A stretch of 62,124 nucleotides of DNA, filler included, from Platydemus manokwari (Eukaryota): the NCBI GenBank assembly GCA_037951405.1. It is 5 parts of 5 records of this genome, joined end to end, with 100 filler letters (N's around TTAATTAATTAA, not from the genome) between each part and the next. Parts side by side here need not be neighbours in the genome. Positions count along the whole stretch, not along the records: positions 27,617 to 50,430 come from JBBMOY011166990.1; 4 more parts are not named here. The stretch is one strand, 5' to 3'. The notes beneath the pieces were generated by a model. It worked only from the letters and a program-made list of their open reading frames with translations, made no database searches and was not told where the DNA came from. Shown here piece by piece: positions 28,775 through 50,162 of this stretch. How positions within the stretch are numbered: the stretch's first letter is position 1; every line of letters begins with the position of its first letter. Both the position numbers and the translations under genes were made by a program.

Positions 28775-29788
28775 ATGATCTTATACAAACCTACAAAAAG
28801 AAAGCTTTTGATTTTAATTTATTATCTCATTCCAATAGTGGGGATATTTGAAATTATTACAATTTATCGTTTCAATTTCTTAAAACCCCCAAATTCATTC
28901 ACGGATTTTGATTATCCCTCAACGGTAAATTTCCATCGACTTCTTCAACTCAACGATACATCAAAATTTCCCAAACTGATCAAATATCGACCGAAACTTC
29001 TCCATACTGTTGAGTGGGAAGATTTTGAAAACATTAAATTGATGATTTTTGTCAAATCTGCGATGGATAATTTCGAGAAACGTACAGAAATTCGTCGAAG
29101 TTGGTCATCGTTCAATTGTCGAATGATATTCAATTTTCATGTATATTTCGTAATGGGAGAAAATAATAAAGTCAATAATAGAGAAAAAGAAATCCAAAAT
29201 CAAGTTCAAAACGAAAAGATGGAATACCATGATATTTTGCAGTTCAATTTCCATGACCATTATTATAATAATACATATAAATTAATAGCGATATTAGATT
29301 ATTTTGTTACCTATCATGACAATATTTCGTATATTTTAATTGTTGATGATGATTATTTTATCAATCCACTAGAATTGATGAACACTATTGAATCAGAAAT
29401 TACCTCAGAAGAATTTCCATCATTCGTCGGTGGTTATGTATGGTATCAAAATAAACCCATACGATTCAAAGCCAACAAGTGGTACGCTTCATATGATACA
29501 TATCCATACGAGTTCTACCCGCCATATGTAACTGGCGGTTTTGTTTTAATGTCCAATGTAATGGCGAGAAAATGCAACAAATTACTCCAGTATTTACAAT
29601 ATCTACCGTTTGAAGATGTTTTAATTGGAATTTTATTATTTAAAATTAAAACGTACCCGACTCATATGAAAAATGTATTTGTATCAGAGATGAAGAATTT
29701 TCCTAACTCATTAATTGCTGCACATGGTTGTCCTCAGAGTTGTCTTAAATATTGGTGGATTCATCATTATTATAGAAATTGTCAATGA
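28775..29788 (+). CDS. GT31-family beta-1,3-galactosyl/GlcNAc-transferase (Galactosyl_T, brainiac-like), single exon, 337 aa
   Basis: N-terminal type II TM helix. GT31 motifs FVKSAMDNFEKRTEIRRSW, EYHDILQFNFHDHYYNNTYK, VDDD (DxD), YPPYVTGGFVLMS and FEDVLIG. Confidence 0.92.
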   Translation: MILYKPTKRKLLILIYYLIPIVGIFEIITIYRFNFLKPPNSFTDFDYPSTVNFHRLLQLNDTSKFPKLIKYRPKLLHTVEWEDFENIKLMIFVKSAMDNFEKRTEIRRSWSSFNCRMIFNFHVYFVMGENNKVNNREKEIQNQVQNEKMEYHDILQFNFHDHYYNNTYKLIAILDYFVTYHDNISYILIVDDDYFINPLELMNTIESEITSEEFPSFVGGYVWYQNKPIRFKANKWYASYDTYPYEFYPPYVTGGFVLMSNVMARKCNKLLQYLQYLPFEDVLIGILLFKIKTYPTHMKNVFVSEMKNFPNSLIAAHGCPQSCLKYWWIHHYYRNCQ

Positions 29789-31369
29789 ATATTTAAGATC
29801 TAAGATTCCAAACATTTATATATTAAAATTTTTAATTAAAATTTTATTTTTAGAAAATTACTTATGTTTCGAATAGATTATTATTATTATTTTTATTATG
29901 TTTTTAATTGATGACTTTCAGTAGTTGTGTTATTTATTATTAGCATTATTTAGTTTATTAATCATATTGGAGATCAAATTAAAGTAACATATTATCATTT
30001 AAATTTATTATCGGTGTATAGTTCAGCTATGATTTATATATTTATTTATTAAAATTCATTTATAAAATTTAATTTATAAAAATATTTTTTCTCGTTGTTT
30101 ATATATTTGAGAGTTGAATATTCCAATATTTTAATTTGAGCGATTGCTTTTAACTCCAATGAATGATAATGTGCTTATTTAACTTTATAGCAACGATTCG
30201 TAATCGAGTTTTTGAATTTTGTATAATAAGATTTTGTTTTATTTTCATTTTGTTACCTAATATCTTAAAAGACATACATCATTTATAGAATTTTCATTAT
30301 ATATTGATCATGTTTTGATTTATTATTCTTTTACTCACTTATGTCAATTAAATATTTGTATATCATTGAGTATCATATGACAATCTTGGTTTTGATAGGG
30401 ATTAAATTTATTTTATTTTAAATTTAAATTTTAAATTTATTTTATTTAAACGCATTTTGAGAATAGCCCTCTGCACACACATGATTACAAACCTGTGTCT
30501 GTTGCAAATCTTCACCATTAATTTGAGTTGAATTTTACTTATCGAAAAATATTAAATTTGCAGAAGATCGATAAATTAAAACACAGAAATTTTTATGTAA
30601 TCAATATTACTGTGAAGATTAAATGTAGATATTAAAAAAACTATATGTTTGTTTTGAGGTGTATCTATGTGTTCTACGATTTCTTTTTCTTTCGATAAAA
30701 TTTAATATTTTTACTGACAATAAATAGTTCATTAAACAAAAATCACTGAAATCCAAAAATTAAAACCGAAATTAATTCAGTTTTATCTGAAAATAGTAAC
30801 ACATGATGCTAAGCATATAATATTACTAAAAATAGCCACATGACGCATAAAATACACACATGAAATAAATTGAAATACCATATAAACGAGTGAAACCGGT
30901 AACAATGCACATAAAAAGTTTCGTACAAAATTTTAACTCTACAAGTTTTTAATCACACAAAATTATTTGAACGAATTTTATTATTATTTCGTTATTTGTT
31001 TGTATTGACAAGTTGACATTTATTATTTCACAAGCTAATTATTTTGAAGAAATAGTTTAAATATATTAATGAGTAAATTTTTCATTGTAATTGTACTTAA
31101 GATTAAACCCGCGGCTGTTTCCAATATTTTGTTCTTTTAAAATCTCATAGGAAGCTTACACCTGATTTCCCACTTTCATTTTTCTATAAAGAGGCTTGTC
31201 CTGCCAACTAGGTTACACGCTCCTTAGTGTTTTCTTGAAATTACTGTATATCCACAATATATTTATGTATCAGCTGCTTGTTGATACAAAATTATCTTTA
31301 TTAATTAAATGTATTTATCATGTTATCTCATTTTCTATTCATTGTTATATAATTAGTATTTATATTTTA

Positions 31370-33250
31370 GGGAATGGTTGCGCTATCTCAATGCTTATTT
31401 TCAATATTGCCATAAACCCGGTATTAATCCAAATGGAACACTCAAAAAATTGTGGAATCATGCTAGCAAAGAATCACATCACTGGCCTATGCCGATGATA
31501 TTGCAATTATCTCCAAAAGTAGCGAAGAATGTCAAATGTTAATTAACCAGTCTCTGCCAATCGTGGACTAATTGAGCATAAACTTCAAACCAAACCAGTG
31601 TTGTCACATGTGGACCATGAAATCGAAACAACAGTCCAGTGGCCTTCAAATCAATAGCCAGCAAATACCGCAAATGCAATTAGAAGAACATTACAGATAT
31701 TTAGGGGTTAACTTTACCCTAAATCTGTATAATTCAATAGACAGTCTTGAAGTGGAACTAAAAGAAAGTCGCTGACTGTATTCTGCTACAACGGCAAAAA
31801 CCCCATGCCTACAGTATGTTTGTTCATAGCAAATTGATCTTTTTTGCCAGGACTTACTATGTTACATATACCAAGTTGGAGAGGTTGGACATCCAATTGC
31901 GGAAAATATTGAAAAAGATAATCAGTGTACCAAAATGTTGCTCAACGTACTTCTTATACTCGACGAAATCAAACAGTGGTAGTGGATTGCAAAGCATAGT
32001 AGCAGAATTCACAATCCAATCAATATCAAATGGGCTAGCAATCTTAAACAGTAAACAAAAATTTATTAGGGAAATTGCAAAGGAGTCCCTACAAAAGGCT
32101 TCTGCTCAAAACTTCGTGGAATCATTAAACTGGTTAAATTCCAACCCAAGGACCAGAGAAAAGAAGCACTCGTGGTAGGACAAGATTAGTGAGTCCATCA
32201 GATATACACAAATCAAAATGTTTACCACAGTCAACTTCCAAATCATCGACGGATAAGTTGGTATCAGAATCTATTAATGCATCAGCACAAAAGAAGAATC
32301 ACTGGGCCAAAATAACCTGAAAAACTGCCAAAACTACTCCGACAATATTTCAGCAGAAGTTATCAACTTCACTGGGCCAAGCAAATTTGATGTGGCAGAT
32401 ATACAAAGATATTTCCGGAAATAACTACAACGAAGGACTTTCAATAGCAGAGTTTTCCTTTGTACACCAAGCACGGTCTGACGCACTGGCAACTCTCAAC
32501 AAGAAGTTCATGCTGGGCCAACAGTCCCGAAAATACTTATATGAAGTAGAATCCCAGGCACATGCTTTCACTAAATGTAATGTGTCTCATTCATATATTC
32601 TCAATCGACATACTCGAATAATTGAAATTTTGGCTAAATACATCAATAACTTTACTGAAAAATCCTGTCAACTTACCGGATCAAAGCTGAGCGTGGATTT
32701 GCAGGTAATTAATAACAGGACGAGCTGTATCAATCTAGTTGACGTCAAATGCCTCATGGATGAACCGCGACTAATGAACAATGTGGATGAAGTCAAATTA
32801 CAAAAATACGAAGATCTGTGGAAAGAGGTGAAGAAAGCCAAACCAGATTGGAATGTGAAACTTCATATCTATGTGATTGGAGTACTGGGGATATGGGCAT
32901 CAAAAAATGAAACCGTACTACGCAAACTAGGTTCCAAAAGAGATACTACTGAAAAGGTAAGATATGATTGCAGCAGGTCCAACATCAACTCTGCATACCA
33001 ATAGTGGCAATTTCACCAAGGGAAAGCCACTATCTATTCAAAGTATAGGATCGAATTGGATCAGAACGATAACATCTCTGACGACGAATTTGCAGATTTT
33101 GCGAATGAAGAGACATCCAAAGAACTTGGATGGACAATGACGAGAAAAGGAAAGCGTGCCGAGGATTAAAAAGCGAAGCTGTGATAATATTCCCTGCCAC
33201 TTAGTGGTGAAGGTGTCAGACATGTCATTAAAAAATTGTTGTAAAAATAA
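31370..33250 (+). mobile_element. Decayed, 5'-truncated non-LTR retrotransposon with C-terminal restriction-like endonuclease (R2/R4/NeSL-type group)
   Basis: Frameshifted RT motifs GCAISMLIFNIAINP, LAYADD (YADD 31488-31499), INFKPNQC, YRYLGV, GSGL. Then the remnant zinc-knuckle ESQAHAFTKC..RH and RLE motifs (P>V)DL..., LVDVKC, KLQKY, VIGVLGIW. Multiple stops. AATAAA near 33246. Confidence 0.88.
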
Positions 33251-36200
33251 ATCTTCTTACTATTGATTTTATTATCCGGGAATTATTTAACAACAACCAC
33301 CCATATCTGTTGAATTTCAGATAATTAAGTAAAAGATCATATAACCTTCTGACTCAATTTTATTTAAATTTTTCAAATCTTTAACAAAATAAACATTATC
33401 GAGTTAAGTAAGAGTTCATCGGAGTACATAGAGTACTTTCAAAAGGTAATAACAAAATGGCAAAAGGGAGGTAATAATAAAACCCACATAATTGCATAAA
33501 GCAATGTAAAAGGAGACAGCATCAACTCCAGGAATGCAAAGACATGGAAAAGCAAACATAGAAACAATTTTTAGATAACGCAAATGTACATACATATACA
33601 TACATAGAAATGTCAAATGTTGGAAAGTGAATCGAATCAAATTCAGAACCAATATATCAATACAGACTTATAAAAATAATAGTTCGACCATTGTGTGGTT
33701 GAGAAAACCATAACATGGGCATGCTCATACTCTAATCAGTTAGCAATTAAACAGATGGTGTATCAGAATATGAAAAATTTCAGGGAAAAATTTGATAAAG
33801 TTGAATGGATATATAAAGACTTAATCAATTTATAATTTCAAATGTTAAAAATTATCATTTTAGATTTTCAAGGATTAAAATTACGATACAGAGTTTGAAA
33901 AATGATGGATTGTTTGAATTGTCATCCGAAACAAAGTACCGAAATTCAACTACTACATAAGCTGACGTGAAACGACCACAAATCACAAATTTGAAAATTA
34001 GTGAAAACTTCATAAATTTGAATTTAAGTGCATTTCAAAGTTACGAGAATAAGAGATCAATACAATTTATCGGAGTTTAAAGCCTGATAACGAAAGAAAA
34101 AAATAATCATTTCAACCTTTGGTAAAACATATTCTTTGGTTTACTAGGTTTCTAAATTTAATTTAACTTAAATCAAAACAATTTGAAAATTATGTGGAAA
34201 TTAATGAGAGTTTAATGATTATTGAAGCCTTATTAAAAGATGAGCTGAGTTATAATTTACTTTCACTAATAATATTCAATTAGTACATCTCACTCCAAAG
34301 ATACATGTATGTTATAAACAGATTATGAAGTTATTATAAATCAGAAATAGGATCAATGAATTGATTCAAATAAGTCATGATTATTATTATACTGAATACG
34401 ATTCAATAAATAATTATTAATTTAATTGAGTATTTTGTGGTTGTCATTAGCTTTTCATTGTTCTAAAGAGCTTCAGTAACCTGTATGAGGGCCAAGTTAC
34501 TGAAAAATTGCTGAAATATCTGAAGGTTGGAGCTATATAAATTATTGATTGTTGCAACAATAATTATTTGTTCCGTTGCAGCAAGTTTGGCTGGTACTAA
34601 ACGTACACAACAATATGTTAATAAAATTATTATTATTCAATGTGCGTGGAGATATAATGAATATATTGGGATTCCCACCCAATGCTTACCATATGATGTA
34701 TATATATACTTATATATATGATGTACATAAATGTATATACATAAGTAGCATACATAACAGAATGCCTTTGACCATGGACTCACCAATTTAGCTGAAAACA
34801 GAACTCAATTTATCCGAAACCAATCATCAATCCAGTCTAGCCTGAGTCGAGCTACAATGATGATTTGACAACTATATTACTCTTGATTTCTGACAATTGA
34901 TAACTGCTGATATTTACAATTATATTACTCTTGTTATATTGGTAAATGAATGATTTTTATAAGACTTTTGTGTATCGTTGTTTTTAATAATCGTTCGAGT
35001 CAATTATTAAGAGGATCATTCATAGAAAGAGGACATCTCATTCAATATCTGAGTAAGAGATATTTTATTTCGTATTATCACCTTTATTTAAGTAATGGTC
35101 ACGTTCTGTAAATTATTTAATATCTATTTTCATTATTAACCACCGTTGATAAATTATATGAATAACATTTTTGCCACCAAACTCTCTTCTCCATTATGCA
35201 TATCTTTCCTCCGTCCGCTTCGGTCTCTGCTGGCTACTTCCTCAGGCAACGTGTCGGCTATTTGCATCAATTTTTTTGTTCAAATTCTTCAACTGTGTTA
35301 CGTTTTATTTCTTAAAATATATTTATTTAAATCGATTGTGCTTATTTGAGTTCGAGTCGATAACCTTAACCAGTAGTTAATTAACTCATAAAGATTAACT
35401 CGCGTGATAATTTAAACGTAATAATTTAAATTGCATTATTGTGTGTCAGTCAATTTGGTTGAGGAGATTGATTGACAAATTTAATATTATAGCGTTCGAG
35501 ATCAGTGTTGGATATCATAAAGAAGGACTAAGTCATCAGCTGATTTAAACCTTTAGATAATACTAATGTTTAACTTACCAATAGCTAGGTCTTCATACTC
35601 GTTATCGAAGCCCCTTAAGAGCCAGTTAAAATACAGAACCAAAAAATTTACTTAATAAATATGATAATAAATTGGTTAACATTAATAAAATTTGTTTAGG
35701 AAAACGAAAGTTAAACAAGATTCAAAAGAAAACAAAAATTGTCAAAAATACGCAACACACTACGCAAGTAGATTGCGCAAAATATTCACAAAGGGGATAT
35801 CGGAAAACCAAATTAATGAATAAATAATATTTGCGATAACGATAATGTAATTAATTATAATATAAAATTTATTCACTCTCAAAAATCTTCTTCGTCAGTA
35901 GTGCTTGTAATAATCTTTGGCTCCGAATCGGAACTCAAAAATTTTTTTGGGGCGAATATTATTAAATGTTCTGTCTTTATACACTATTTTTCTTGTGCTT
36001 ATTTTGTTCTGTCTCTTTATTTTAATTTTTTATTTATTCTATAGTAATTTTTCGTTCATTCCATTTCAGTAACTGGTTATTATTTTTATTTGCTAATAAA
36101 CTATGCAACGATTTTATAACTTAACATTTTCATGTCTAGCTTCTATTTTATTCGCTTTTTGAAACATAAAGAAGTAATTTTTCTTAAAACAAAATGGCAT

Positions 36201-37424: not shown

Positions 37425-38318
<894 letters not shown>

Positions 38319-39676
38319 TTAAGAAGGATTCAAAAAATTTTATAATTAACTATATTAAAACAAAGTTTAAAATTTCGAAATTAAGCTATAGGTAGTCTTC
38401 ATTGAAATTTATAGATATTAATAATTATTTTAAATTATTTAATTAAATTTTGGGAAAAGAAATGTTAAAGTAATTAAAAATAATTAGTTATTGAATAAAT
38501 TTTAACATTAAATATTTTAAATAACAACGAATTGCATACAGAGGAAAAAAATTAGCTTCTACTGGAAGAAATAACCGGTAGGAAAAGAATTTATCGAACT
38601 AAGTAAGATTCCAAATAATAATAATCATCATTGGAAATGGTTCATCTATATTGTAAAATCTATAATATTTTTTTCTAAATCTATATTTCAGCACAAAAGA
38701 GATTTGCTATCAGAGCCTTTACTCGTTGACACTTGTTTTTAATGTGTGTGTTTAGGTAAAATTTTAATTTCGAGTAATTGAGAAATTAATCAATTTTAAT
38801 TAAATTGAAATTTTTCTTAAAAGAGAGGGATTTAATTTAGATTTCTGTATTACAACATTCGATTTTGTGTATTTATAGTATATTTAAATAAAAAATGCTG
38901 GAACAATCTTTGCTTTTGATTATTGCTTCATTTTGATTATAATATTATAATTCACTCAATTAGCCAATGGACATCACACTTCAACTCACGCTAGGATTGA
39001 ATAATAAAACCATGACCCAAATAGTTACTAAGTATGGGCATAACAGATAAGCAAGATTCAGCAATCTGTATAAGTAATAGTAATTTTTAATTTAAATATT
39101 TAAGTATAGGTTTTGAAAAATTTGTTAATTAGAGACCTAATCATGCAAAAGATAAAAGATTTTGCACCTTGGAACCCTTATTTTAGCATTTTAACCATTT
39201 GCTTACATACACAAACACACATACATAGCAATCAACCAATCGAAGACGACTTAAATGGAAAATTTTAATTCGAAAAAGGGACAGTCACACTGTAGCACGC
39301 AAATAGAGATTGACCAAAACCGAATATATAAAATCAATAGATTCAATTGGAATTTGAGAAATAAAAGATCAAATGAAAACGTGATACAGGCGTGATACAA
39401 AAATCACACACAAATGTAAAGTATAAATACTAATGTAAACACGCCCAGCTTTCAATTGGAAGCCAAGCTTTACGTTGTTGCTTTATATATTAATTATGGT
39501 ACTTGGAAGAAAAGTTGTGTTGATTTTTTATGCTAATTTTTCGTTGAATTTAGAGTTATTCGTGTTTATTCTGAGTAGAACGTATCTGTGGGGTACAAAT
39601 TGCAACATTCTATTTTTTAAACCCAAAAATTGAAAATTCTTTCAAAAATTCAAACACAATTTATATTTTAGTAAAT

Positions 39677-40214
39677 TGATAGAAAATAAAACTGCTCAAT
39701 TTAATATCATCAAATAATTGAAATGATTCACATTTTTGGTAGAAAAATCGAAGAGATAAGAAATTGTATAGATAGTACAAAAATGTTTGTGCAGTACATT
39801 ACATTAGCAAAGAACGAAATGACTTTATAAAATTCGGAACGATGATTTCTTTCTTGTATAACAAATTCTGTTAGGAATCATTAATTTCCATTAATTAAGA
39901 TAACATGTTCTGAAGTTGCGATTTTGATTCATTAGTGATTTGTGAATTGAATATTTGATTTGTGGAAAGTAAAGCTTACATTTTTACAAAAGGTAAACCA
40001 CATTAGTTATTATAACTTAGAAAATCACGCTCTAAATGATATATCGTAAACACATTTATTAAAATATACGTTCTCAATAAAGTATTCACTTCAATTTTTT
40101 ATAAACTAACTGGTTGAGCTAAACTGTACATTGTATAGTTGTCGTATAACTTAGTAAAGATTTTTGAATTAATTTGTATTTGTTCTTATTGTAAGAAACT
40201 AAGAAAACTAATCA
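39677..40214 (-). repeat. 3' LTR (complete, TG...CA)
   Basis: On the + strand it starts TGATAG and ends CTAATCA, which are imperfect inverted termini. It abuts the PPT. Confidence 0.85.
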
Positions 40215-40215
40215 A

Positions 40216-40222
40216 CCCCCTT
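40216..40222 (-). other. Polypurine tract (AAGGGGG) preceding 3' LTR
   Basis: The minus strand reads AAGGGGG-T-TGATTAG, so the purine run is 1 nt from the LTR TG. Confidence 0.65.
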
Positions 40223-40978
40223 GTTAGCAATGATATGATGTTCATAAATTTCAAACTAGTATTATTATTGAGTTAAAAATCATGAAACCTACAATTAAAA
40301 CCACTCATTTCTGGAATCATGAATTGCTGGTTGTTTTGTTTTCAGTTTCTGTTAAAATTTTTTTTTGAATTTTTCTGAGAATTTTCTGGATTTTTCAACA
40401 TATTTTAGCAGACCAATTGGACATCAGTATGTCAAATGCATACTTGTGACGTTTAAATTTCACTTTATTCGATATTTTTCTTCTAACTGGAGGTAGAGTG
40501 CCTAATGCACAAGTCTGACCGAGTTTCTTCTTGATATTCAAGTGCCATTTTCTCGTTTTTTGTCATTATTTATTTAATTTTCTTTCCGATTAAAGGAAAT
40601 TGTTCATTGATTTTCATTTTATATTATTTATATTATTGTTGATTATTGTTTCTATTTTACAAAACATTTAATAAAAGTTAATTAAAATAAAATCAAAATG
40701 AGAAAATTTTGTTCTCTAAGTTTATTAGTTAGGATCTTGGTTTTTGAAGAATTGGTTCTCATTTAATTCGAATCTCATGATTGATCAAATTTGTTAATTC
40801 TAAGTCAAATTTAGAAGCCATAAAATTTGAGCCACTTTATTTGCCCACTTTTCAATAAAATATTATTACCATTAACTCTTCAATGCTAATTCGATTTTGT
40901 CGCGATTGTGGTATTTTTTTTATCTATACCCATGACATTAATTGATTTTATTACTGCTAAGAATATGATATTGGTAGT

Positions 40979-41036
40979 GTCCTATTTTGGCTTTCTATGT
41001 GCCTCATCAGTGCCTCGGACCAAAGACAGATAGGAC
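40979..41036 (-). ncRNA. Type III hammerhead ribozyme, G12A core variant (probably inactive copy)
   Basis: Minus strand reads GUCCUA-UC-UGUCUU-UGGUCC-GAGGCA-CUGAUGA-GGC-ACAUAGAAA-GCC-AAAA-UAGGAC. Stem III is GUCCUAU/AUAGGAC with an AUC cleavage triplet. Stem I is 6 bp and the CUGAUGA core is exact. Stem II is GGC/GCC. AAAA replaces GAAA. Confidence 0.85.
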
Positions 41037-42560
41037 TAAAAGAAATATAGATAATAGCTTTTCGTTTATAAACTAATTTTGATACCAATTCATCAAGTAA
41101 TCCAAAATCCAGGATTACTATATTGTATCGCAGAAACCGACATGATTTTAAAGCGCTGACAGGCAATAAAATTTGAAGCATTGTTGGCAGCAGGATAAAT
41201 CCAGTTGGAGTATGGAAATTCGCAATGGTTAACAGATTGATTCATGAGTATGATAGGTGATCGTGGCTCAACCTAATATTAATGAAAAATAATAATTAAA
41301 ATATTAATAATTAATTATAATTAATTATAATTATTTGTTGGAGTATTAATGAATAACAAATTTCTGACTCCAGATAATGTATATTAGTCAATATACAACT
41401 ACAACACTGACGAAGACCTCAATAATCAATATAAGCACAATGATTTTATCAAATCTGGCTTCCAACTGGCAGTTGTCTATCTTTACATTGCTTTTTATAC
41501 GGTTATCGTGCTTGTACGTTCGAATATGAGGTTTCAATAGTCGTTATTTCTATAGCAATATCAACATAATGATTTTACACACTTCCCTTATCCGATAGCC
41601 AGATTCAGAGACTAAATTAATAATAAATTAGAACGCAGCTTTATTTATAATTACAGCGGAGTTACAACAAAAATTGTAATGCACAGTTCATTGTTCTCCT
41701 TTTATATCGGTACTTAATCAAGTTTGTTACACAGATGTAGAGAAATTTAGATTCAATTATAATAACTAAGTCTACGCTTAATACTTATTATGCTACGGAA
41801 TTTTATTAGAATAAGATCACTTTGTACTTCCCCTAAAATTATTTTTTTTTAAATTACAGTTACAGCAAAATATTACTATCAATATTAAAGTTATTACTGA
41901 AGTTAGCTTAGAACCGAGCTGGATCATACATATGGTAATCTGGATCCACATGTAGATTGCTGTCGAGTAGTAAGTGACTTCGGACTCATCTTTATATACC
42001 TCGCTTATCGAAAGTCCAATAATGTTCCAAGAATTTCGGTGTATGGTATAGTTTATTTACGTCGTATAGGTTCCTTTTGATGAATGATTCTCGATTGGTT
42101 GCATGTCCCTTATCACATCCTATGGCCGTCTTCCAAAGTTGCTTTGTAATACTTTTCAAATAGAATATACTAGTAGACTGAATCATTACTTTTTTGCATA
42201 GCCAATACTTTCACAACCCTGATCCCAATATTTCATCTTGAATGCGCTTAGCTTAGCAAAGTCTCATGGAATATCAATGAATAAATTATTATAGAATAGA
42301 ATATCAATTAATTTAATTTGGTTAACAAAAATAAATTCTTCTACAACTTATACATCTAATCAATTTTATTTCATATGAAATTCTCAACACCGCAGGTGGA
42401 CAATAAAATGTTACGTTTTATTTTACAAATAAAACATAAAACTTAACTTAAAATTACATTTCAATTAAATCATAATATTAACTTGATGAGAAATTAATAA
42501 ATTTATTTTTGATCAATAGCTTATTATATATAAAGAGCTACAACTAACAAGCTTTACATA

Positions 42561-43274
42561 ATGAGCCAGGCTCGTTCTAAATTTCTTAGACCGGATAAAA
42601 ATAAATTAATAAATAAAATCAATCAAATAAAAAAGGAAAATCAGAAATTAGAAGACAACGAATGCTCAAAATTCCTCACTCTACCGAAAGAAAATTCAAA
42701 ACAAAATGCCACATATTCTAATAGTAATACTTCGACAAATAAATGTGCTTGGTGTCAGAAAGTTCAAAACAAACCAAAATCGACCGATAATGGTGATGAA
42801 ACATCGATAAAATCCAAGTTTCAATCAAAAGACTTTGCATGTCAATTTCCTGGTCGAAAAGTTAAAGCAGATATTTACACTCGTTACCAATCTAGAAATA
42901 AATCAAATCAGGACATCAAGCATGCTTATCTGAAAAAAACATGCTGTCGATGTAATGAAAAACGGCCAGAATCGTGTGCAAAAATACAACAAATTTATTC
43001 AGATCGAGTGTCTATAAATAACAACAATGATCTTTTGCTGAAAAGAACCAATAACAACGATCGTAAGCATAATGAAAAAATTCTAGATAGAAATGAAGTA
43101 AAAGTAGATCATCCACATTATCATCATTGCTGTTTTTGTGAAAACTGTTCACATCATGAACCGAAGAAATATCGAACTCCAAAAAAGAAAAAAAGCCAAC
43201 ATTCTACTAACGATACTAGTTCACCATCTTCGTGTTCTTCTCTAAGAACTGAATTATCGTCGTTATCTATATAA
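42561..43274 (+). CDS. Hypothetical 237-aa K/N/S-rich protein with Cys/His clusters, antisense inside the LTR element
   Basis: Uninterrupted 714-nt ORF in very AT-rich DNA. TATATATAAA ~30 bp upstream and AATAAA at ~43425. Motifs CAWC, CCRC and HHCCFCENCSHH. No family recognised. Confidence 0.65.
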   Translation: MSQARSKFLRPDKNKLINKINQIKKENQKLEDNECSKFLTLPKENSKQNATYSNSNTSTNKCAWCQKVQNKPKSTDNGDETSIKSKFQSKDFACQFPGRKVKADIYTRYQSRNKSNQDIKHAYLKKTCCRCNEKRPESCAKIQQIYSDRVSINNNNDLLLKRTNNNDRKHNEKILDRNEVKVDHPHYHHCCFCENCSHHEPKKYRTPKKKKSQHSTNDTSSPSSCSSLRTELSSLSI

Positions 43275-44264
43275 ATTTTAGAATATCCGTATATTAGGCG
43301 GTTTTTAATCACATAAGTGGGTTTATTTACTTTTTTAAAAATCTTTATGGAGTTTTAAAAATCGCTACGAATTAAAAATTTAAAATATGAATAAGAAATA
43401 TCTTCATATAATTTCATAAATAACAATAAATACTGACTCCCAATTAAAACCCATTGTATTTAGATTTTGTTGAATAATTTTTTGCAAATATAAAATTGAT
43501 TTATAAAAGAGCTTAATTTCCACTCAAACTAAAGTTTAGCACAATCGTAAGATTGAAAAAATCAGAAGAAATTAAATCCTTATCTAGGTAGAAATGATCA
43601 ATTTGTTTCGGTAAAAAAATGAGAAAAGTATGTATTTTCAATTGAATTAGATTATATTTACTGTTACATTATAAATATTGCTCAATGTGTTCAATTTTGT
43701 TGGACTCTGTTTAAGAAATAGACTTTTATTAAATCTTTTTTATACTCACAACTTTATTGTTTACTCAAAATAGACATAATTCTTTGGAAATGCACGGGAT
43801 ACAAATATTCATATTGCTCTTCGAATTTTAAATTTCATAGGTCTGGTTATAAATATTTATTGTTTTATATTACCTCTATAATTAGCAAAAGTTATTTTAA
43901 ATGTATACTTTAAAATAATTAATTCTATTATTAAATATTAGAATTCCTATTTATTATAATAACCATTTTTCGAAATTTCTTTCTATTATAATGAAGTTAT
44001 AACACTTAAAAGGATTTTAACTGAAACAATTATTTCAAATATAATGGATATGATAAATAGAAAACTAAACAATAATAAAAATTTACACATTACAATTCAG
44101 TCAGTAAGCCACAGCATATACCAAAAGCGCGCACCGGTGTTTTGTAAGTAAAATCAGAGAATAAGTCAAAATTACATGATAATATATCATTAGAAATCAA
44201 GAAACAATTAATTTATAATAATTTGGGGATAATCTACGTTATTTCAAATGCTATTTCTAGTTCT

Positions 44265-44560
44265 GGATGCCGTTTTCAACTCAGAATCTTCCTTAAGTTC
44301 GACCTGAAAGTATGCTTGGCCTAAATCTATTGCGGAGAAGACTGTTGCGCCACGCATCTATATTAGGTACTGGAAAAGAAAACTTTTCGGTCTGTTCGTT
44401 TAATTTTCTGAAGTCTAAACACATCCTGATCGATCCATCTTTCTTTGTAATAACTAAGGAGAGTTCCAAGGGATTTTGCAAGGCATTATGACATTACTTT
44501 CGAGAAGATTTTCTATCAACTCTTGAATTTTTCTTCCTGAATGGTTCTTGGTAATTGGTT
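44265..44560 (-). pseudogene. Ty3/Gypsy reverse transcriptase N-terminal fragment
   Basis: WNSP / LVITKKDGSIRMCLDFRKLNEQTEKFSFPVPNID / FSAIDLGQAYFQVELKEDSELKTA across frameshifts. It stops before YxDD. Confidence 0.9.
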
Positions 44561-44689
44561 CCCTTCTTGGATTCTGTGTACCACTGTCTACCATCTGCTT
44601 TTTGACACATCTGTGAGTGCTTCCTCTTCCTTTTGCCGTTTTCCTTCTTTACTTCTATTCTATCTCTAACTGATATATGTCCTATTGAC

Positions 44690-45720
44690 TCATTGCCACT
44701 GGCGAGATAGCCACATGAGGTTGATTTCAGTTATTTTGTCTTCCATGGAGAGTGTGCTAACACAATCACTTGCTTCACTTTCGATTTGAATATCGGCTTC
44801 ATCTTCTTCGTCATGAATGCCTAGTATTCTCCTCGAACTATTGTAACTGCGCTTTCTGACTAAATGGCATTTTCTGAACGGATGCCCATCTTTTCCGCAT
44901 ATTAAACATTTATTCCGCAGTGGACATTCAAATTTCCAGTGACCAAGCTCACCACAACAAAAGCTAGCTCCCAGTTCTAAATAATCACCACATGATGTGG
45001 GTTTTCCTCTACAATCGTTGTAGAATTTAGAAGCAATAGCCTCCATTGAACTTGTTGGTCTCGTATTGTTTGGAGATTCCATGTGATTAACAGGTGTCTG
45101 GTAATATTTTTTACACCAAAATATCTTTCTTGCAGGATTGGGCTTAGATTTTTGAACGAAGTCTCCTTCTGAAAAGTTTTTCTCGGATTACTTTCATATA
45201 CCCACTGGGAATATATCTTCTTGATATATCTGCTTCGTCTGACTTAGCTTCTTCAAATTGACTACTAATTCTCATCTTCTATCGTCGGACATTGTAGGGT
45301 TGAGAGTGAAAGACTCTTTCAGTTTCTTGCTATTTAAACCTTGCAGAATAGTCTTGAAATTTCTTCAAGAGAGTTTTTCTTGTTGAATATCTCCTTCATA
45401 AATTTCTTCACCCGAAGTTCATAACTTCGATACTTCCCACCTGGTCTTTACCGCATTGCTGTCAGATTCTGAACGTTTTCATACACTGCCTTGGCATGTG
45501 AGAAAGCTTCTAAAAACCATTTCTCAATTTCTTCATTTGTAATAGTTTCTTCAATACTGCTTTATTCTTACCACAATTTGGCATCGCCTCTTAACAGCAT
45601 GTCAAATGCAAATGATAATTCCATTTGGTTAAATGCTGCAAAATCCTTGGTTAATTGAAACCATTTTCAACGTCTTGAATTGATGAATCGAAGAACGACG
45701 GCTTCGGAATCAATAATCCC
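44690..45720 (-). pseudogene. Retrotransposon gag remnant with two CCHC zinc knuckles
   Basis: KPSFF..DV..WF, LLRGDAKLW*, LTAMR*RPG (capsid-like). Knuckles xFCCGELGHWKFEC and CLICGKDGHPFRKC. In-frame stops and frameshifts. Confidence 0.88.
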
Positions 45721-45907
45721 TGAGTTTTTTGCAGCAGAATTTCAATTCACTCAACAATATTATGAAATAATATCAATTTTAATTGAAAATAAATCAATTG
45801 GTAAATTATACCACATTGATAAAGAAAATAATTATCTCTTAATAAAAATTATTAAACATAGATCAGAAAATATCACATCGAATAAAAATCAGTTTTAAGA
45901 TTCGCAA

Positions 45908-46428
45908 ATAGAAAATAAAACTGCTCAATTTAATATCATCAAATAATTGAAATGATTCACATTTTTGGTAGAAAAATCGAAGAGATAAGAAATTGTATAG
46001 ATAGTACAAAAATGTTTGTGCAGTACATTACATTAGCAAAGAACGAAATGACTTTATAAAATTCGGAACGATGATTTCTTTCTTGTATAACAAATTCTGT
46101 TAGGAATCATTAATTTCCATTAATTAAGATAACATGTTCTGAAGTTGCGATTTTGATTCATTAGTGATTTGTGAATTGAATATTTGATTTGTGGAAAGTA
46201 AAGCTTACATTTTTACAAAAGGTAAACCACATTAGTTATTATAACTTAGAAAATCACGCTCTAAATGATATATCGTAAACACATTTATTAAAATATACGT
46301 TCTCAATAAAGTATTCACTTCAATTTTTTATAAACTAACTGGTTGAGCTAAACTGTACATTGTATAGTTGTCGTATAACTTAGTAAAGATTTTTGAATTA
46401 ATTTGTATTTGTTCTTATTGTAAGAAAC
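45908..46428 (-). repeat. 5' LTR copy (lacks 15 outer and 2 inner terminal nt relative to the 3' LTR)
   Basis: Matches 39679-40199 at a constant offset of 6229 with no indels. Confidence 0.85.
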
Positions 46429-49379
46429 ATATTAAATAACAAATAAATAATCCAATGTTTATAATGATTGCTATAATATAAGGTTTACAGAGTTACGACT
46501 GGCTAACCATGGCAATGTACAAGTTGGTATTGCAGAAAATGGGAATTGTAAATAATTTCGTGGTTCTTATCTAATCAACCAATCCAAATCTTAATGGGTT
46601 TTCAAATGGGTTTTATTTACATATACTTGATTCTTTCGATATGCATTTTATTATTTCGGATTTAATTTATATATTTATTTTGTTGTATTTAATTTCTTTA
46701 CATAATATTCCAAGAGTTGTATAAACATAAGATGTTCCCTTCACATCATATGTCAGAATACTTTTATACATAGACAGGCAACAATTGTCATATTTTTTAA
46801 TAAATTTAAAATTAAATTGCTTATAGTCCGGAAACCTTTAGTCAAAATTATCAAGTTATAATTAGTAGTTCACGAGACTCGTATTAATCGCATATCAATT
46901 ATTGAATCGCTAGAAAACCAACAAATTTGATAAATTCCTAAAGCAATCAATTCAAGTTCGGATGTCTAAACTAAGACGACGTTGGACAGCAATTATACGT
47001 CCAGTATATTACTGGAAGAAAGAAGACTTTGTTCTTTTCTAGCTGACAATTTACAGAAATTGTCGCAAATCCGTTAGTAGTAAGCAAATAATGTAGTCAA
47101 GTCTATATTCAGTTATGTATATTCACAAATTTCCTATTTATCGAGCTCTGCTCAATCTTGAATTTGATTTTGCATCAATATTACAAAGACGTCATAAATC
47201 AGACTTCTGAGAAGTTGTAAATTGGGTTTCGTTAAAAATCCATCGCGAATTATTTTTTATTTATTGCATTTATATTAGTGTGATTTGGCATGTAAAATAT
47301 GTTTTATAAAATCAAAACTAGTTTTAATATTGAACAGTGTCGATCATAGGTAGTATCGTTATAAAATTATCATTATAAAAGTGTCACTCACATCATTGAC
47401 AATAATTACTTTTAATCGAGGGACGTTGGGAACAATAATGCAACAATTATCAAATAAATACAAGGAGACTGATAGAATTAAAACATCACTTCTACCACTG
47501 CAATAATTTATATTATCAGTAGAGTGTTAGGTGAATGAAAATAATATGTGCTTAATAAAACCAGATTTAATTGATGAGCTTACAGAGATTGACAGTAAGA
47601 CAGAATTAGTGTCATTGAATGATCTAAAATTAGTTAAAGTTATAAGTTATTAGTTAAATTCGTCAAAAGACCTTAAAGCATTATTGGTAAACATACAAGG
47701 CCAACAAGACAACAATCAATATATGACATTAACCAATAATTGTCAATAAAAAAGACTATATACTCTCTAAGGAAATTAGGAAAAATGAACAAGAAGTAAA
47801 AGCAAAATCACTATTCAGTAGAATTTATTCTATAGAAACTTCACCAGAATTTTCTACAGTTAATTCCAAAAAATCACCTTCAAATCAACTTGAAGCAATG
47901 AGTAAAAAATCCATTCAATTTAGTAGAAATGTTAACAAAGTTTGCAGCAAATATTTGACAACTTTAATAAAATCAATTCTCCTTCGACCTTATTTTCCAA
48001 CAAGAGTTAAGTGACATTAATTCCCAACATTGGCTGCTCAAAATCTTTAGTGCATTATGTCTTCGCACAGAAAATCATCTGCATTGCACATTTGTTATTT
48101 TTATTTATTATTGTACCGTTGTGACCCATAAATATTATCCAATTAATTAATATTTAGTATCCTCATCTATATTCTTAGCACGCAACCTATGATTTATTCA
48201 ATTCTAAAGATCAGATATTGATGGAATAACTTAATTCCTATCTCAGTTTTTATCAACTATACAGACTAAACATTCAAATGATCAACAAGTAATTGGAGTT
48301 AATTTTGATAACAAATAATCAATAAACCGGAACAAATTCCATCATTATTTAAATAAATAGCATGTACTTTAATTTAAAAGAAGAATTAATACTAAATTTA
48401 GTAATCTATAGAATTTGGAAACCAGGCATAGTAAAGTAGTAGACCAATGAGACTAATTACATTTAGTTTTGATCTAACAAATCCTGGACAATGCTAGTTT
48501 CGAATTTACGCTGTTGAAAAAATTATTAATAACTGTCTCAACATAACTACTTATATTAGTCAAAAAGTTATAAGTTTTTATAATTTTTTTTATTAGTCTC
48601 AGTCAATTACTCGGAGTTTAATGGACTGATTATCATCTTAATGTTTGAGATCTCACCAGAATTTTTCTCAAAATAATAAAATCTTCTTGGGGGCCAAACA
48701 GATGAAATTTTCTGAAAATATTTTCAATTATAATAAACTTTAACAATAAATATTTTAAATTGATATGCATATTCATCATAAACACGAAGATATTTTAAAA
48801 TTTATAGGTTAATAGTTTTATGAATGTTGAATCTTCATGATACCCTGTTTCTCTAATATTTAAACATGTATTTATTAGTAAGTTAAAAATTATGTCACTC
48901 AATAATTCTTAATATGACTAGAATTTATTAGTTATTCTTACTGACAGGGGTAATAACTTTTAAATTTAAAAAATTACAAAAGTTCCTGAAAATGTACGAT
49001 TACATTGCAACCACTCATTTAATCAAAATGTTCCTGTGACTGTCAAAATAATTAAAAGATATTTTCTTACAACATTTTTAGTATAATTGATATTTAGTAA
49101 CTATATTTTATAGAAGTATGTTTATTATAATTTGCAATAATCTTTAAAAATTATGAAAAAACTGAAAAGTAAACTATACTTTAATTTATGTTAATTATTA
49201 AATAATATTTTTGATAAATTACAGTTTAAACGTATAGTAGAAAAAATTAAGTGGAAATACATTCAATATTTAATCTCCCATAAATTTATTGAATAATATT
49301 AAAAAATGCTTTATAACTGGTTCCGTTGTTTTATTATATTAAAGTTAACTACGTACAAATATTGTATTCGTTATATTAC

Positions 49380-50162
49380 ATGGCAAATAACATGAAATTA
49401 ACTAAAGAAGAAGAAATTTTATTACAAGATTTCAGTCGAAGCGTTTCTACAAAATCTAGTGCTTTATTTTATGGAAATGCTTTTATTGTTTCGGTGCTGC
49501 CAATTTGTAGGATATTTATTCAATATCTAATGTTGATTAAAAATTTCTTTAGGGTTATTTTGGCGTATTCATGATATGGATATAATGTCTAATGCTCTTC
49601 CTTTTATTATTGGAAGTCTTATAAGCGCTTATTTGGTTGCTATGGCTTATAAAAATACTAAATTTATTTTGAAGCACAAGTAACCCTCCTAAATTCGAGT
49701 TCTTTAGTTCTAATTATCATTATAGAATAGCCGTTAAAAGAGAAGATGCAATTAATAGAGAAATGAATAAAAAATTTGGGGATGACAAGAAACTCACCAG
49801 GAAAGAAAAGGATGAAAGGTAATATTTTATAAACTGATTTTGAAACGTTTTAATTACTTGAAATTTTTAACCTAATTTTTATATTTGATTAAATGTTTAT
49901 TATTAAGAATTTTATGGAAAAAGAACGAAGTAGCTGATTTCGAATCCACTACTTTCTCGATTTTGTTGAACAACGCTTTATTCATTTTGATTATTTTGAT
50001 ATCATCGTTTGTTGTTTTAAGGAATCAAGCCTTGTTATTGTAAGTTATTATTAAGTAATTGCTCAATATTAACTATATTATTTTAGAAATTATGCGTTGT
50101 CTATGGGCTCAGCTGCTGCTCTAGTGGCACTCTTTTCTACAGGATCAGTCAACAAGCAATAA
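49380..50162 (+). CDS. SSR3: Translocon-associated protein subunit gamma (TRAP-gamma)
   Basis: Exons 49380-49506, 49553-49679, 49726-49818, 49908-50039, 50087-50162. Peptides [75 protein letters not shown] and ALFSTG. Confidence 0.97.

What the first reader, a model, noticed from the sequence alone, without database searches (positions are those of the whole stretch)
39677..46428. Composite non-autonomous LTR element: apparently identical LTRs, ruined gag-pol, ribozyme and cargo ORF
Seen: 521-bp direct repeats with no visible difference bracket a gag with stops, an RT fragment ending before YxDD, and ~4 kb with no recognisable RNase H or integrase. That 4 kb holds an antisense ORF and the hammerhead. 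Established: LTRs are identical at insertion, so identical LTRs imply a recent insertion. Inference: the coding decay predates the last jump, so the element was mobilised in trans by a helper. It would be a LARD/retrozyme-like parasite propagating non-retroviral cargo, and is the best candidate for an undescribed system in this window. It sits ~1.4 kb upstream of the PSMA7 start.
Basis: partly seen in the sequence, partly recalled or inferred. Interest (0 to 1): 0.8.

Follow-up and report, generated by a model that had tools for sequence, protein, structure and literature searches.

The report
Broken retrotransposon enclosing a conserved gene
Two identical 521-bp repeats bracket the broken front end of a Ty3/gypsy-type retrotransposon and about 4 kb of ordinary-looking DNA holding a real, conserved small gene; the claimed ribozyme is absent, and this single copy cannot show whether the block ever moved as one unit.

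Summary
The repeats are real: 39679-40199 and 45908-46428 are identical over 521 bp and end abruptly. The retroelement reads on the minus strand. A gag remnant with a zinc knuckle and the first third of a Ty3-like reverse transcriptase lie at 44247-45650, broken by stops and frameshifts. No YxDD, RNase H or integrase lies anywhere between the repeats. No hammerhead exists. The "antisense ORF" (42561-43274, +) is a genuine gene. It has a full-length relative at 54% identity, saturated synonymous sites and a twofold excess of third-position changes. It has only that one relative among 1.84 billion representative proteins. My best reading (0.5) is a defective, chimeric LTR element that was already broken when inserted and carries host-like DNA. 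However, the textbook hallmarks (TG..CA on both copies, a 4-6 bp target duplication, a tRNA primer site) are not met. No second copy could be found. The "trans-mobilised cargo carrier" idea is therefore plausible but unproven, and "retrozyme-like" is rejected. Modest interest.

The parts
45908..46428 (-). Repeat copy B. It is the 5' LTR in element (minus-strand) sense, followed by the leader and gag remnant.
   Evidence: It is 100% identical over 521 bp to 39679-40199. No similarity continues beyond either end. It has no terminal inverted repeat, and TATAAA and AATAAA motifs are present in element sense.
39679..40199 (-). Repeat copy A. It is the 3' LTR in element sense.
   Evidence: Same calls as copy B. 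Taken alone it has no perfect flanking duplication of 4 or more bases at any of 16 boundary offsets.
45651..45907 (-). Leader between the 5' LTR and the gag remnant. It has no canonical primer-binding site.
   Evidence: The first TGG lies 95 nt after the LTR. Self-priming-type complementarity to the LTR is no better than shuffles (8 nt, 61% of shuffles reach it). No tRNA gene in the piece is available for comparison.
44649..45650 (-). gag remnant (broken gene). It carries a nucleocapsid-type CCHC zinc knuckle. It has at least three in-frame stops and at least one frameshift (by eye; lower bounds).
   Evidence: zf-CCHC E=0.0022, 18.5 bits against a cut-off of 20.8. Retroviral nucleocapsid chains E=0.016. 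GC is 0.36-0.42 against about 0.25 around it. No relatives of 91-289 aa were found.
44247..44648 (-). pol remnant (broken gene): the RT lead-in and the first third of the RT domain. It has at least two frameshifts inside the RT. Most of the protease is missing, as is everything from before YxDD onward (rest of RT, RNase H, integrase).
   Evidence: Ty3 RT 4ol8 residues 104-138 E=1.4e-5 and Ty3 Gag-Pol 7q5b. Ty3 RT 58-102 and MLV RT 50-74, weak but collinear. RVT_1 positions 65-97/205 E=4e-4. The three matches lie in different frames. All three minus frames carry 19-31 stops across 44247-45650.
40200..44246 (.). About 4 kb of AT-rich, host-like DNA occupying the place where the rest of pol should be.
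   Evidence: No retroelement family was found in any piece of at least 28 aa on either strand, and no YxDD. GC falls from 0.37-0.42 to 0.16-0.26 exactly where RT similarity ends. There are no terminal inverted repeats or tandem arrays beyond AT-rich chance matches.
42561..43274 (+). ORF237: an intact 237-codon gene antisense to the element. It is cysteine/histidine-rich, of unknown function, and conserved.
   Evidence: Relative P0001 is 232 aa, 54% identical, E=7e-68, aligned from Met to the last residue. pN is 0.265 and pS 0.79; differences by codon position are 65/64/124 of 231. The open frame is 246 codons against a shuffle maximum of 137-161. P0001 was the only credible hit among 1.84e9 representatives; the second, P0002 (E=1e-6), is a translated tandem repeat. 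No Pfam family. The AlphaFold model is uninformative, pLDDT 33.5.
43275..43354 (+). Conserved block directly after the ORF237 stop, probably the 3' UTR.
   Evidence: It is about 80% identical to L001 751-831, higher than the coding part. No stable shared fold, -1.5 kcal/mol.
40216..40222 (-). Purine run (AAGGGGG in element sense) 17-23 nt before the 3' LTR. It is a possible displaced polypurine tract.
   Evidence: Only three G5/C5 runs occur in 22.8 kb on both strands, so the chance of one on the right strand within 30 nt is about 0.002. The 15 nt that actually abut the LTR are only 33% purine.
39669..39676 (.). Left outer flank 8-mer, just outside a TG that precedes copy A.
   Evidence: It matches 46430-46437 at 7 of 8 positions. 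The chance is 0.0015 at a fixed offset and 0.017 over 16 offsets.
46430..46437 (.). Right outer flank 8-mer, just outside the A that completes a CA after copy B.
   Evidence: See the left outer flank 8-mer.
41004..41010 (-). Bare CTGATGA heptamer, probably what was read as a hammerhead. It is not a ribozyme.
   Evidence: No helix II can form between it and the next GAAA (sequence). No Rfam hammerhead at E<=10.

Best explanation
The block 39679-46428 is one defective, chimeric LTR retrotransposon copy of Ty3/gypsy type lying on the minus strand. Its order is 5' LTR, leader, broken gag, the first third of RT, then about 4 kb of host-like DNA in place of the rest of pol, then the 3' LTR. The foreign segment carries a complete gene (ORF237) with its own flanks, pointing the other way. 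That gene looks like a normal, selected, lineage-restricted host gene, not a retroelement gene. The chimera would have formed earlier, by a deletion and read-through or by template switching during reverse transcription, as described for gene-capturing LTR elements. This copy would then have been inserted recently using proteins supplied by another element. Shown: the repeats, the domain remnants and their order, the absence of the rest of pol, the absence of a ribozyme, and the reality and conservation of ORF237. Inferred: that the two repeats belong to one insertion, that the copy was already broken when inserted, and that the 4 kb travelled with it.
For: The repeats are identical over 521 bp, so the 95% upper bound on their divergence is 0.58%. 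gag, the RT lead-in and the RT N-terminus are collinear in one orientation, starting about 260 nt inside copy B. The total length of 6.75 kb is typical of such elements. The remnant carries at least seven disabling lesions in 1.4 kb, whereas 1042 bp of LTR carry none. Decay in place would be expected to leave many LTR differences (inference). RT similarity and raised GC end together, which fits replacement of the rest of pol better than decay. A rare G-run lies 17-23 nt upstream of the 3' LTR on the correct strand, p about 0.002. The outer ends read TG..CA if 2+1 flank bases are included, and the next 8 nt match 7/8. Copy A alone has no duplication of its own, which argues against an independent solo LTR. 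Capture of host DNA by LTR elements through read-through or template switching is documented (PMC13317346).
Against: Strictly, the 521-bp repeat has no TG..CA. The flank bases that would supply TG and CA at the outer ends are not matched at the inner ends (3 of 3 edge positions differ). Normal reverse transcription should not produce this. There is no perfect 4-6 bp target duplication, and a mismatch in an 8-mer is odd for a copy with untouched LTRs. No TGG lies within 94 nt of the 5' LTR. The purine run does not abut the LTR. Only one copy is known: the LTR, the gag piece and the ORFs have no match in the collections I could reach. A 4-kb captured segment holding a whole gene with 2.3 kb upstream and 1 kb downstream is much larger than typical captured fragments.
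Confidence: 0.5

Rival explanations
1. This is a pseudo-element. ORF237 and its surroundings are native host DNA in the 11-kb gap between the proteasome alpha and TRAP-gamma genes. A 3'-truncated copy (LTR-gag-RT start) lies on one side, and a second LTR of the same young family lies on the other. The two repeats do not belong to one insertion, and nothing was carried as cargo.
For: ORF237 behaves like an ordinary host gene. It is under purifying selection, it has a conserved block after the stop, it has one relative that is single-copy in its own assembly, and it has no retroelement domain. The 4 kb has the composition of the flanks. There is no perfect target duplication around the pair and no canonical primer site. 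The gap between two divergent housekeeping genes is a natural place for a small gene.
Against: It needs several recent events: two insertions 6 kb apart in the same orientation, loss of one element down to an LTR, and a deletion in the other. All must have happened without a single LTR difference. Copy A has no duplication of its own. A G-run sits just inside copy A where a polypurine tract belongs. The outer TG..CA plus the 7/8 flank match would be coincidence, about 3e-5 before correction for choices.
Confidence: 0.2
2. The identity of the repeats does not measure age. This is an older insertion whose LTRs were homogenised by intra-element gene conversion, or made identical by assembly or polishing. 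The stops and frameshifts arose in place, so no helper-dependent movement of a defective copy need be assumed.
For: Intra-element LTR gene conversion is documented (Cossu et al. 2017, cited in PMC6696364). An old insertion would explain the imperfect flank match, the missing primer site and the displaced purine run.
Against: Identity ends exactly and abruptly on all four sides, with no residual similarity beyond. All three candidate terminal bases differ at the inner edges, which is unlikely for a moderately diverged pair. This reading does not explain how 4 kb with a selected gene came to lie between the LTRs. There are no N runs or other assembly marks in 39-47 kb.
Confidence: 0.15
3. ORF237 is an accessory gene of the retroelement family itself, kept on the antisense strand, and not host DNA.
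For: The ORF is intact inside an otherwise ruined element and is conserved across species.
Against: It has only one relative in 1.84e9 representatives. That relative is a single sequence on a single contig, unlike a multi-copy element gene. The relative's contig shows no retroelement domain and no similarity to the gag-RT remnant. The DNA around the ORF has host composition.
Confidence: 0.05
4. One reading: a retrozyme-like parasite whose internal hammerhead ribozyme processes its RNA.
For: Only two bare CTGANGA heptamers lie inside the element.
Against: No hammerhead family was found at E<=1 over the piece or at E<=10 locally. There is no helix II/GAAA arrangement on either strand. Retrozymes carry the ribozyme in each LTR, are 1-1.5 kb long, and have a 4-bp duplication, a tRNA-Met primer site and a polypurine tract (PMC4918200). 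None of these is seen here.
Confidence: 0.02

Closest known systems
[quoted passage not shown]
   Same: Host-derived sequence sits between LTRs of a non-autonomous element that keeps gag-side sequences. Formation by read-through or template switching is the accepted route (PMC13317346).
   Different: Those are plant families known from several copies, and they usually carry gene fragments. Here there is one copy in an animal-type genome. It holds a whole gene with long flanks, antisense to the element, and no parental copy has been shown.
Non-autonomous LTR derivatives: LARD (over 4 kb) and TR-GAG
   Same: It has paired LTRs, is over 4 kb, has no working pol, and keeps gag-side remains. It would depend on another element's proteins (definitions in PMC6696364).
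   Different: LARD and TR-GAG are multi-copy families with a conserved interior and proper primer site, polypurine tract and duplication. Here the copy number is unknown, gag is broken, and the hallmarks are not met.
Retrozymes
   Same: The only shared idea is a non-autonomous LTR element that relies on Ty3/gypsy proteins.
   Different: There is no hammerhead in the LTRs or anywhere else. The element is five times too long, the interior is partly coding, and there is no 4-bp duplication.
Ty3/gypsy (Metaviridae) LTR retrotransposons
   Same: The RT start matches Ty3 RT best among solved structures. It is preceded by a zinc-knuckle gag in the same orientation.
   Different: There is no RNase H or integrase, so the defining domain order cannot be checked. 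BEL/Pao or a retrovirus-like lineage is not excluded by 130 residues of RT.
Pairs of same-family LTRs around host DNA (a known false-positive class of structural LTR finders)
   Same: Direct repeats occur without a clean duplication, without canonical termini and without a primer site, and they enclose a host-like gene.
   Different: The repeats are perfectly identical. One is followed by gag-RT in the right orientation, the other is preceded by a rare G-run, and the total length is element-like.

Membership tests
LTR retrotransposon (structural definition) | Two direct long terminal repeats bracketing an internal region | tested here: met
   The repeats are 521 bp, 100% identical and 6229 bp apart start to start.
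LTR retrotransposon (structural definition) | Each LTR starts with TG and ends with CA | tested here: not met
   In element sense the strict repeat starts with GT and ends with AT. TG and CA appear only at the outer ends if flank bases are borrowed, and the inner ends differ.
LTR retrotransposon (structural definition) | Target-site duplication of 4-6 bp flanking the element | tested here: not met
   There is no perfect repeat of 4 or more bases at any of 16 boundary offsets. There is only a 7/8 match of 8-mers, p 0.017 over offsets.
LTR retrotransposon (structural definition) | Primer-binding site complementary to a tRNA 3' end next to the 5' LTR | tested here: not met
   The first TGG is 95 nt downstream, and there is no self-priming complementarity. 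Complementarity to the host's tRNAs could not be tested, because the piece holds no tRNA gene.
LTR retrotransposon (structural definition) | Polypurine tract abutting the 3' LTR | tested here: inconclusive
   A rare AAGGGGG run lies 17-23 nt upstream. The abutting 15 nt are 33% purine.
LTR retrotransposon (structural definition) | gag then pol in the sense of the LTRs | tested here: met
   The zinc-knuckle gag remnant is followed by the RT start on the minus strand. Both are broken and pol is truncated.
Ty3/gypsy (Metaviridae) | pol order protease-RT-RNase H-integrase | not testable with these tools
   RNase H and integrase are absent from the copy, and no relatives were retrieved.
Ty3/gypsy (Metaviridae) | RT closest to Ty3/gypsy RTs | tested here: inconclusive
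   The best solved-structure match is Ty3 RT at E=1.4e-5 over 35 residues. That is too short for phylogenetic placement.
Retrozyme | Hammerhead ribozyme in each LTR | tested here: not met
   There is no Rfam hammerhead at E<=1 and no core motif arrangement.
Retrozyme | Small (about 1-1.5 kb) with a non-coding interior, a 4-bp duplication, and a primer site and polypurine tract shared with Ty3/gypsy | tested here: not met
   The block is 6.75 kb with coding remnants and an intact gene. It has no such duplication or primer site. The definition comes from PMC4918200.
Hammerhead ribozyme | CUGANGA and GAAA cores joined by helix II, with helices I and III around a UH cleavage site | tested here: not met
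   0 candidates on both strands of 27617-50430. cmscan was negative.
LARD / TR-GAG non-autonomous families | Multi-copy family with a conserved interior, mobilised by a related autonomous element | not testable with these tools
   The rest of this genome is not available. The LTR 22-mer, the gag piece and the ORFs found nothing in the reachable collections.
Gene-capturing LTR element (Bs1-like) | Internal segment derived from a host gene | tested here: inconclusive
   ORF237 has a non-retroelement, selected relative. Whether this copy is captured or native cannot be told.
Gene-capturing LTR element (Bs1-like) | A parental copy of the captured gene elsewhere in the genome | not testable with these tools
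   Only this 22.8-kb piece is available.

The most novel reading that the evidence does not exclude
An animal Ty3/gypsy-type element has taken up a complete, functional, lineage-restricted host gene with its own flanks in antisense orientation. It has been copied to a new site by borrowed proteins, making it a retrotransposon acting as a vehicle for whole-gene duplication outside plants.
Probability: 0.3. Interest if true: 0.55.

Novelty: new member of a known kind. Interest (0 to 1): 0.3.

Why it matters
If the block did move as one unit, it would be a clean animal example of an LTR element duplicating an intact gene together with its regulatory surroundings. That process is documented mainly in plants, and mostly for fragments. 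If it did not, the locus is a useful caution. Identical repeats plus gag-RT remains can bracket native host DNA and imitate a cargo-carrying element. Either way the work removes a false ribozyme call. It also shows that the 'antisense ORF' is a real, selected orphan gene that annotation of this genome should keep.

Tried and rejected
Hammerhead: rejected after an Rfam scan of the whole piece, a local scan at E<=10 and a motif scan.

tRNA genes for a primer-site comparison: none in the piece.

Longer, diverged LTRs with a converted core: rejected, because the flanks of the two copies score no better than shuffles.

Self-priming (Tf1-type) primer site: no signal.

Split direct repeats of the Ngaro/PAT type and a nested DNA transposon with inverted ends around ORF237: only AT-rich chance matches.

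Remains of RNase H or integrase inside or beside the block: none in 97 + 35 pieces.

Weak Pfam hits (DNA methylase 0.042, Sleeping Beauty HTH 0.04 and others): at the level expected from about 100 queries, so dismissed.

Relatives of the gag piece: none by word search or by metagenome scan. LTR 22-mer in metagenomes: none.

Exact look-ups of ORF237, the gag ORF and the galactosyltransferase ORF: not on record, so this genome is not in the collection.

Synteny through proteasome relatives: the best hits are only about 72% identical and sit on contigs of about 1 kb, or come from distant phyla. No usable neighbourhood resulted.

Structure of ORF237: pLDDT 33.5, so no fold search was run. P0002 is a translated tandem repeat, not a relative. 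The run accession of the relative's sample is in no paper held.

Segment ends coincide with stops.

Full report
**The observation**

The piece 27617-50430 holds one long repeat only. Positions 39679-40199 and 45908-46428 are identical over exactly 521 bp, in direct orientation, 6229 bp apart. Identity stops abruptly on all four sides. Local alignments of 40, 100 and 200 nt of flank score no better than shuffles. There are no N runs inside 39-47 kb.

**The retroelement remains**

These read on the minus strand, so "antisense" in the finding means the plus strand. About 260 nt inside copy B a GC-richer block begins, at 0.36-0.42 GC against about 0.25 around it.
- It holds a gag-like remnant with a CCHC zinc knuckle. 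Pfam zf-CCHC gives E=0.0022, just under the curated cut-off, and retroviral nucleocapsid chains give E=0.016.
- It then holds the lead-in and first third of a reverse transcriptase. One match is to the Ty3 RT structure 4ol8, residues 104-138, at E=1.4e-5. A weak but collinear match covers Ty3 RT 58-102 and MLV RT 50-74. A third match is to RVT_1 profile positions 65-97 of 205 at E=4e-4.
- Both genes are broken. By eye, gag has at least three in-frame stops and at least one frameshift.
- The three RT matches lie in different frames, so the RT has at least two frameshifts.
- Most of the protease is missing, and everything from before YxDD onward is missing.
- These are lower bounds, because no intact relative was available to align. 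Each of the three minus frames carries 19-31 stops over the 1.4 kb.
- I did not read either gene through its breaks and built no joined or mended version.

**What is missing**

No [YF]xDD motif exists in any of the six frames between the repeats. None of the 97 stop-to-stop pieces of at least 28 aa, on both strands, matches an RNase H, integrase or further RT family. The flanks show none either. RT similarity and the raised GC end together near 44.2 kb. The gag-RT part is still recognisable, so a pol tail of the same age should be recognisable too. The rest of pol has therefore been replaced or deleted, not merely eroded (inference).

**The hammerhead**

There is none. Rfam cmscan with permissive filters gave no hammerhead family at E<=1 over the whole piece and none at E<=10 over 40800-41700. 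A scan for the CTGANGA core followed by a helix II and GAAA found nothing on either strand. Two bare heptamers occur inside the element. The one at 41004-41010 (-) is followed by GAAA after eight bases that cannot pair, and this is probably what was seen.

**The antisense ORF**

The ORF at 42561-43274 (+) is a real gene.
- Its open frame of 246 codons far exceeds anything in shuffles of the region or of its own composition (maxima 137 and 161).
- It has a full-length relative, P0001. This is 232 aa, 54% identical, E=7e-68, and aligned from the first Met to the last residue. It lies on a 1.1-kb Logan contig.
- Synonymous sites are saturated (pS 0.79) while pN is 0.265. Third codon positions differ twice as often as first or second (124 against 65 and 64 of 231). 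This is the signature of purifying selection over a long time.
- About 70-80 nt after the stop are more conserved than the coding part, without a shared stable fold.
- A profile search of 1.84 billion representative proteins found only P0001 and a spurious translated tandem repeat.
- No Pfam family matches it, and the structure model is uninformative.
- The relative is one sequence on one contig. Its contig shows no retroelement domain and no similarity to the gag-RT remnant.
- ORF237 therefore looks like a lineage-restricted host gene, not an element gene (inference).

**Surroundings**

A proteasome alpha-subunit gene runs on the minus strand from 38318. TRAP-gamma exons run on the plus strand from 49317. 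The block thus lies in an 11-kb gap between two divergent housekeeping genes, 1.36 kb from the first. The proteasome protein's best relatives are only about 72% identical, and they are lophotrochozoan and flatworm sequences. The source species is therefore not in the protein collection, and I could not name it.

**One insertion or not**

In favour of a single insertion:
- The order LTR, leader, gag, RT start ... LTR is correct, and the 6.75-kb length is typical.
- A G5 run, one of only three in 22.8 kb, lies 17-23 nt before the 3' LTR on the correct strand.
- With 2 + 1 flank bases the outer ends read TG..CA, and the next eight bases outside match 7/8. The fixed-offset chance is 0.0015, times 0.056 for TG and 0.36 for A, before allowing for my choices.
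- Copy A has no duplication of its own.

Against a single insertion:
- The strict repeat lacks TG..CA, and the inner ends do not carry the bases that the outer ends would need.
- There is no perfect 4-6 bp duplication.
- The first TGG is 95 nt after the 5' LTR, and there is no self-priming signal.
- The purine run does not abut the LTR.

Standard reverse transcription makes the inner and outer LTR edges alike. Neither way of drawing the boundaries gives a textbook fresh insertion. I leave this as unexplained.

**Age and helper dependence**

Zero differences in 521 bp bound the divergence of the two copies at 0.58% (95%). The 1.4-kb remnant carries at least seven disabling lesions, several of them indels. 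Decay in place at that level would be expected to leave many differences in 1042 bp of LTR (inference). Three possibilities remain: the copy was already defective when inserted, the LTRs were homogenised (intra-element gene conversion is documented), or the identity is an assembly product.

**Best reading and rivals**
- Best reading (0.5): one chimeric, defective Ty3/gypsy-type copy that arrived broken and carries host-like DNA. It would have formed earlier by read-through or template switching, as in known gene-capturing LTR elements.
- Native host DNA bracketed by a truncated copy and a second LTR (0.2).
- An older element with homogenised or mis-assembled LTRs (0.15).
- ORF237 as an element accessory gene (0.05).
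- The ribozyme version (0.02).

**Comparison with known kinds**

It works like a gene-capturing non-autonomous LTR element (Bs1-like; LARD or TR-GAG by size and content). Membership in any such family needs more copies, which I could not obtain. It is not a retrozyme, because the defining ribozyme, size, duplication and primer site are all absent. Ty3/gypsy affinity rests on about 130 residues of RT and a zinc knuckle. The defining domain order cannot be checked.

**Verdict**

This is a real feature that was mostly correctly observed, apart from the ribozyme. It is of a known kind and of modest interest. The attractive part, whole-gene cargo moved in trans, is plausible but untested. It can be tested by descriptive data alone: copy search, synteny, long reads and presence/absence alleles.

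My scripts printed stop-to-stop segment coordinates, and a notebook entry repeats a few of them, to make references for piecewise queries. Those bounds coincide with stops.

Noticed in passing
window 43275-43354: The 70-80 nt right after the ORF237 stop are about 80% identical to the relative's contig, although synonymous sites of the ORF are saturated. This is probably a constrained 3' UTR element. No stable shared secondary structure was found.
   Followed up: partly
window 31100-33600: A GC-richer block (0.35-0.39) carries unusually long open frames on the plus strand (about 31762-32175 and 32321-33001). None of 48 pieces matches a Pfam family. It may be another mobile element or orphan genes.
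   Followed up: partly
window 28775-29788: A single 337-codon ORF encodes a galactosyltransferase-family protein (Galactosyl_T, E=1.9e-40). This exact protein is not on record in the public gene-position collection.
   Followed up: partly
window 37539-38318 (-) and 49317-50040 (+): A proteasome alpha-subunit gene (Proteasome E=5e-54, N-terminal signature E=1e-15) and a TRAP-gamma gene (four exon-like pieces, best E=8e-15) are transcribed divergently, 11 kb apart. The element block lies between them.
   Followed up: partly
window 41275-41355: An AT-only palindromic/tandem stretch (periods 10-25, arms of 19-37 nt) lies inside the 4-kb segment. It looks like simple low-complexity sequence.
   Followed up: no
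window 34669-34767 (-): A TA-rich hairpin gives weak microRNA-family matches (mir-568, mir-280, mir-297; E 0.2-0.6). All are far below the gathering scores and are most likely chance.
   Followed up: no
window 39669-39678 and 46429-46437, against 40200 and 45906-45907: The outer flanks of the repeat pair supply TG..CA and a 7/8 matching 8-mer. The inner edges of the two copies differ from these at all three edge positions. No standard model of LTR formation explains this.
   Followed up: partly
P0002 (hit): The only other hit of the ORF237 profile is a 387-aa translation of a tandem repeat of about 56 residues. It is not a relative.
   Followed up: yes
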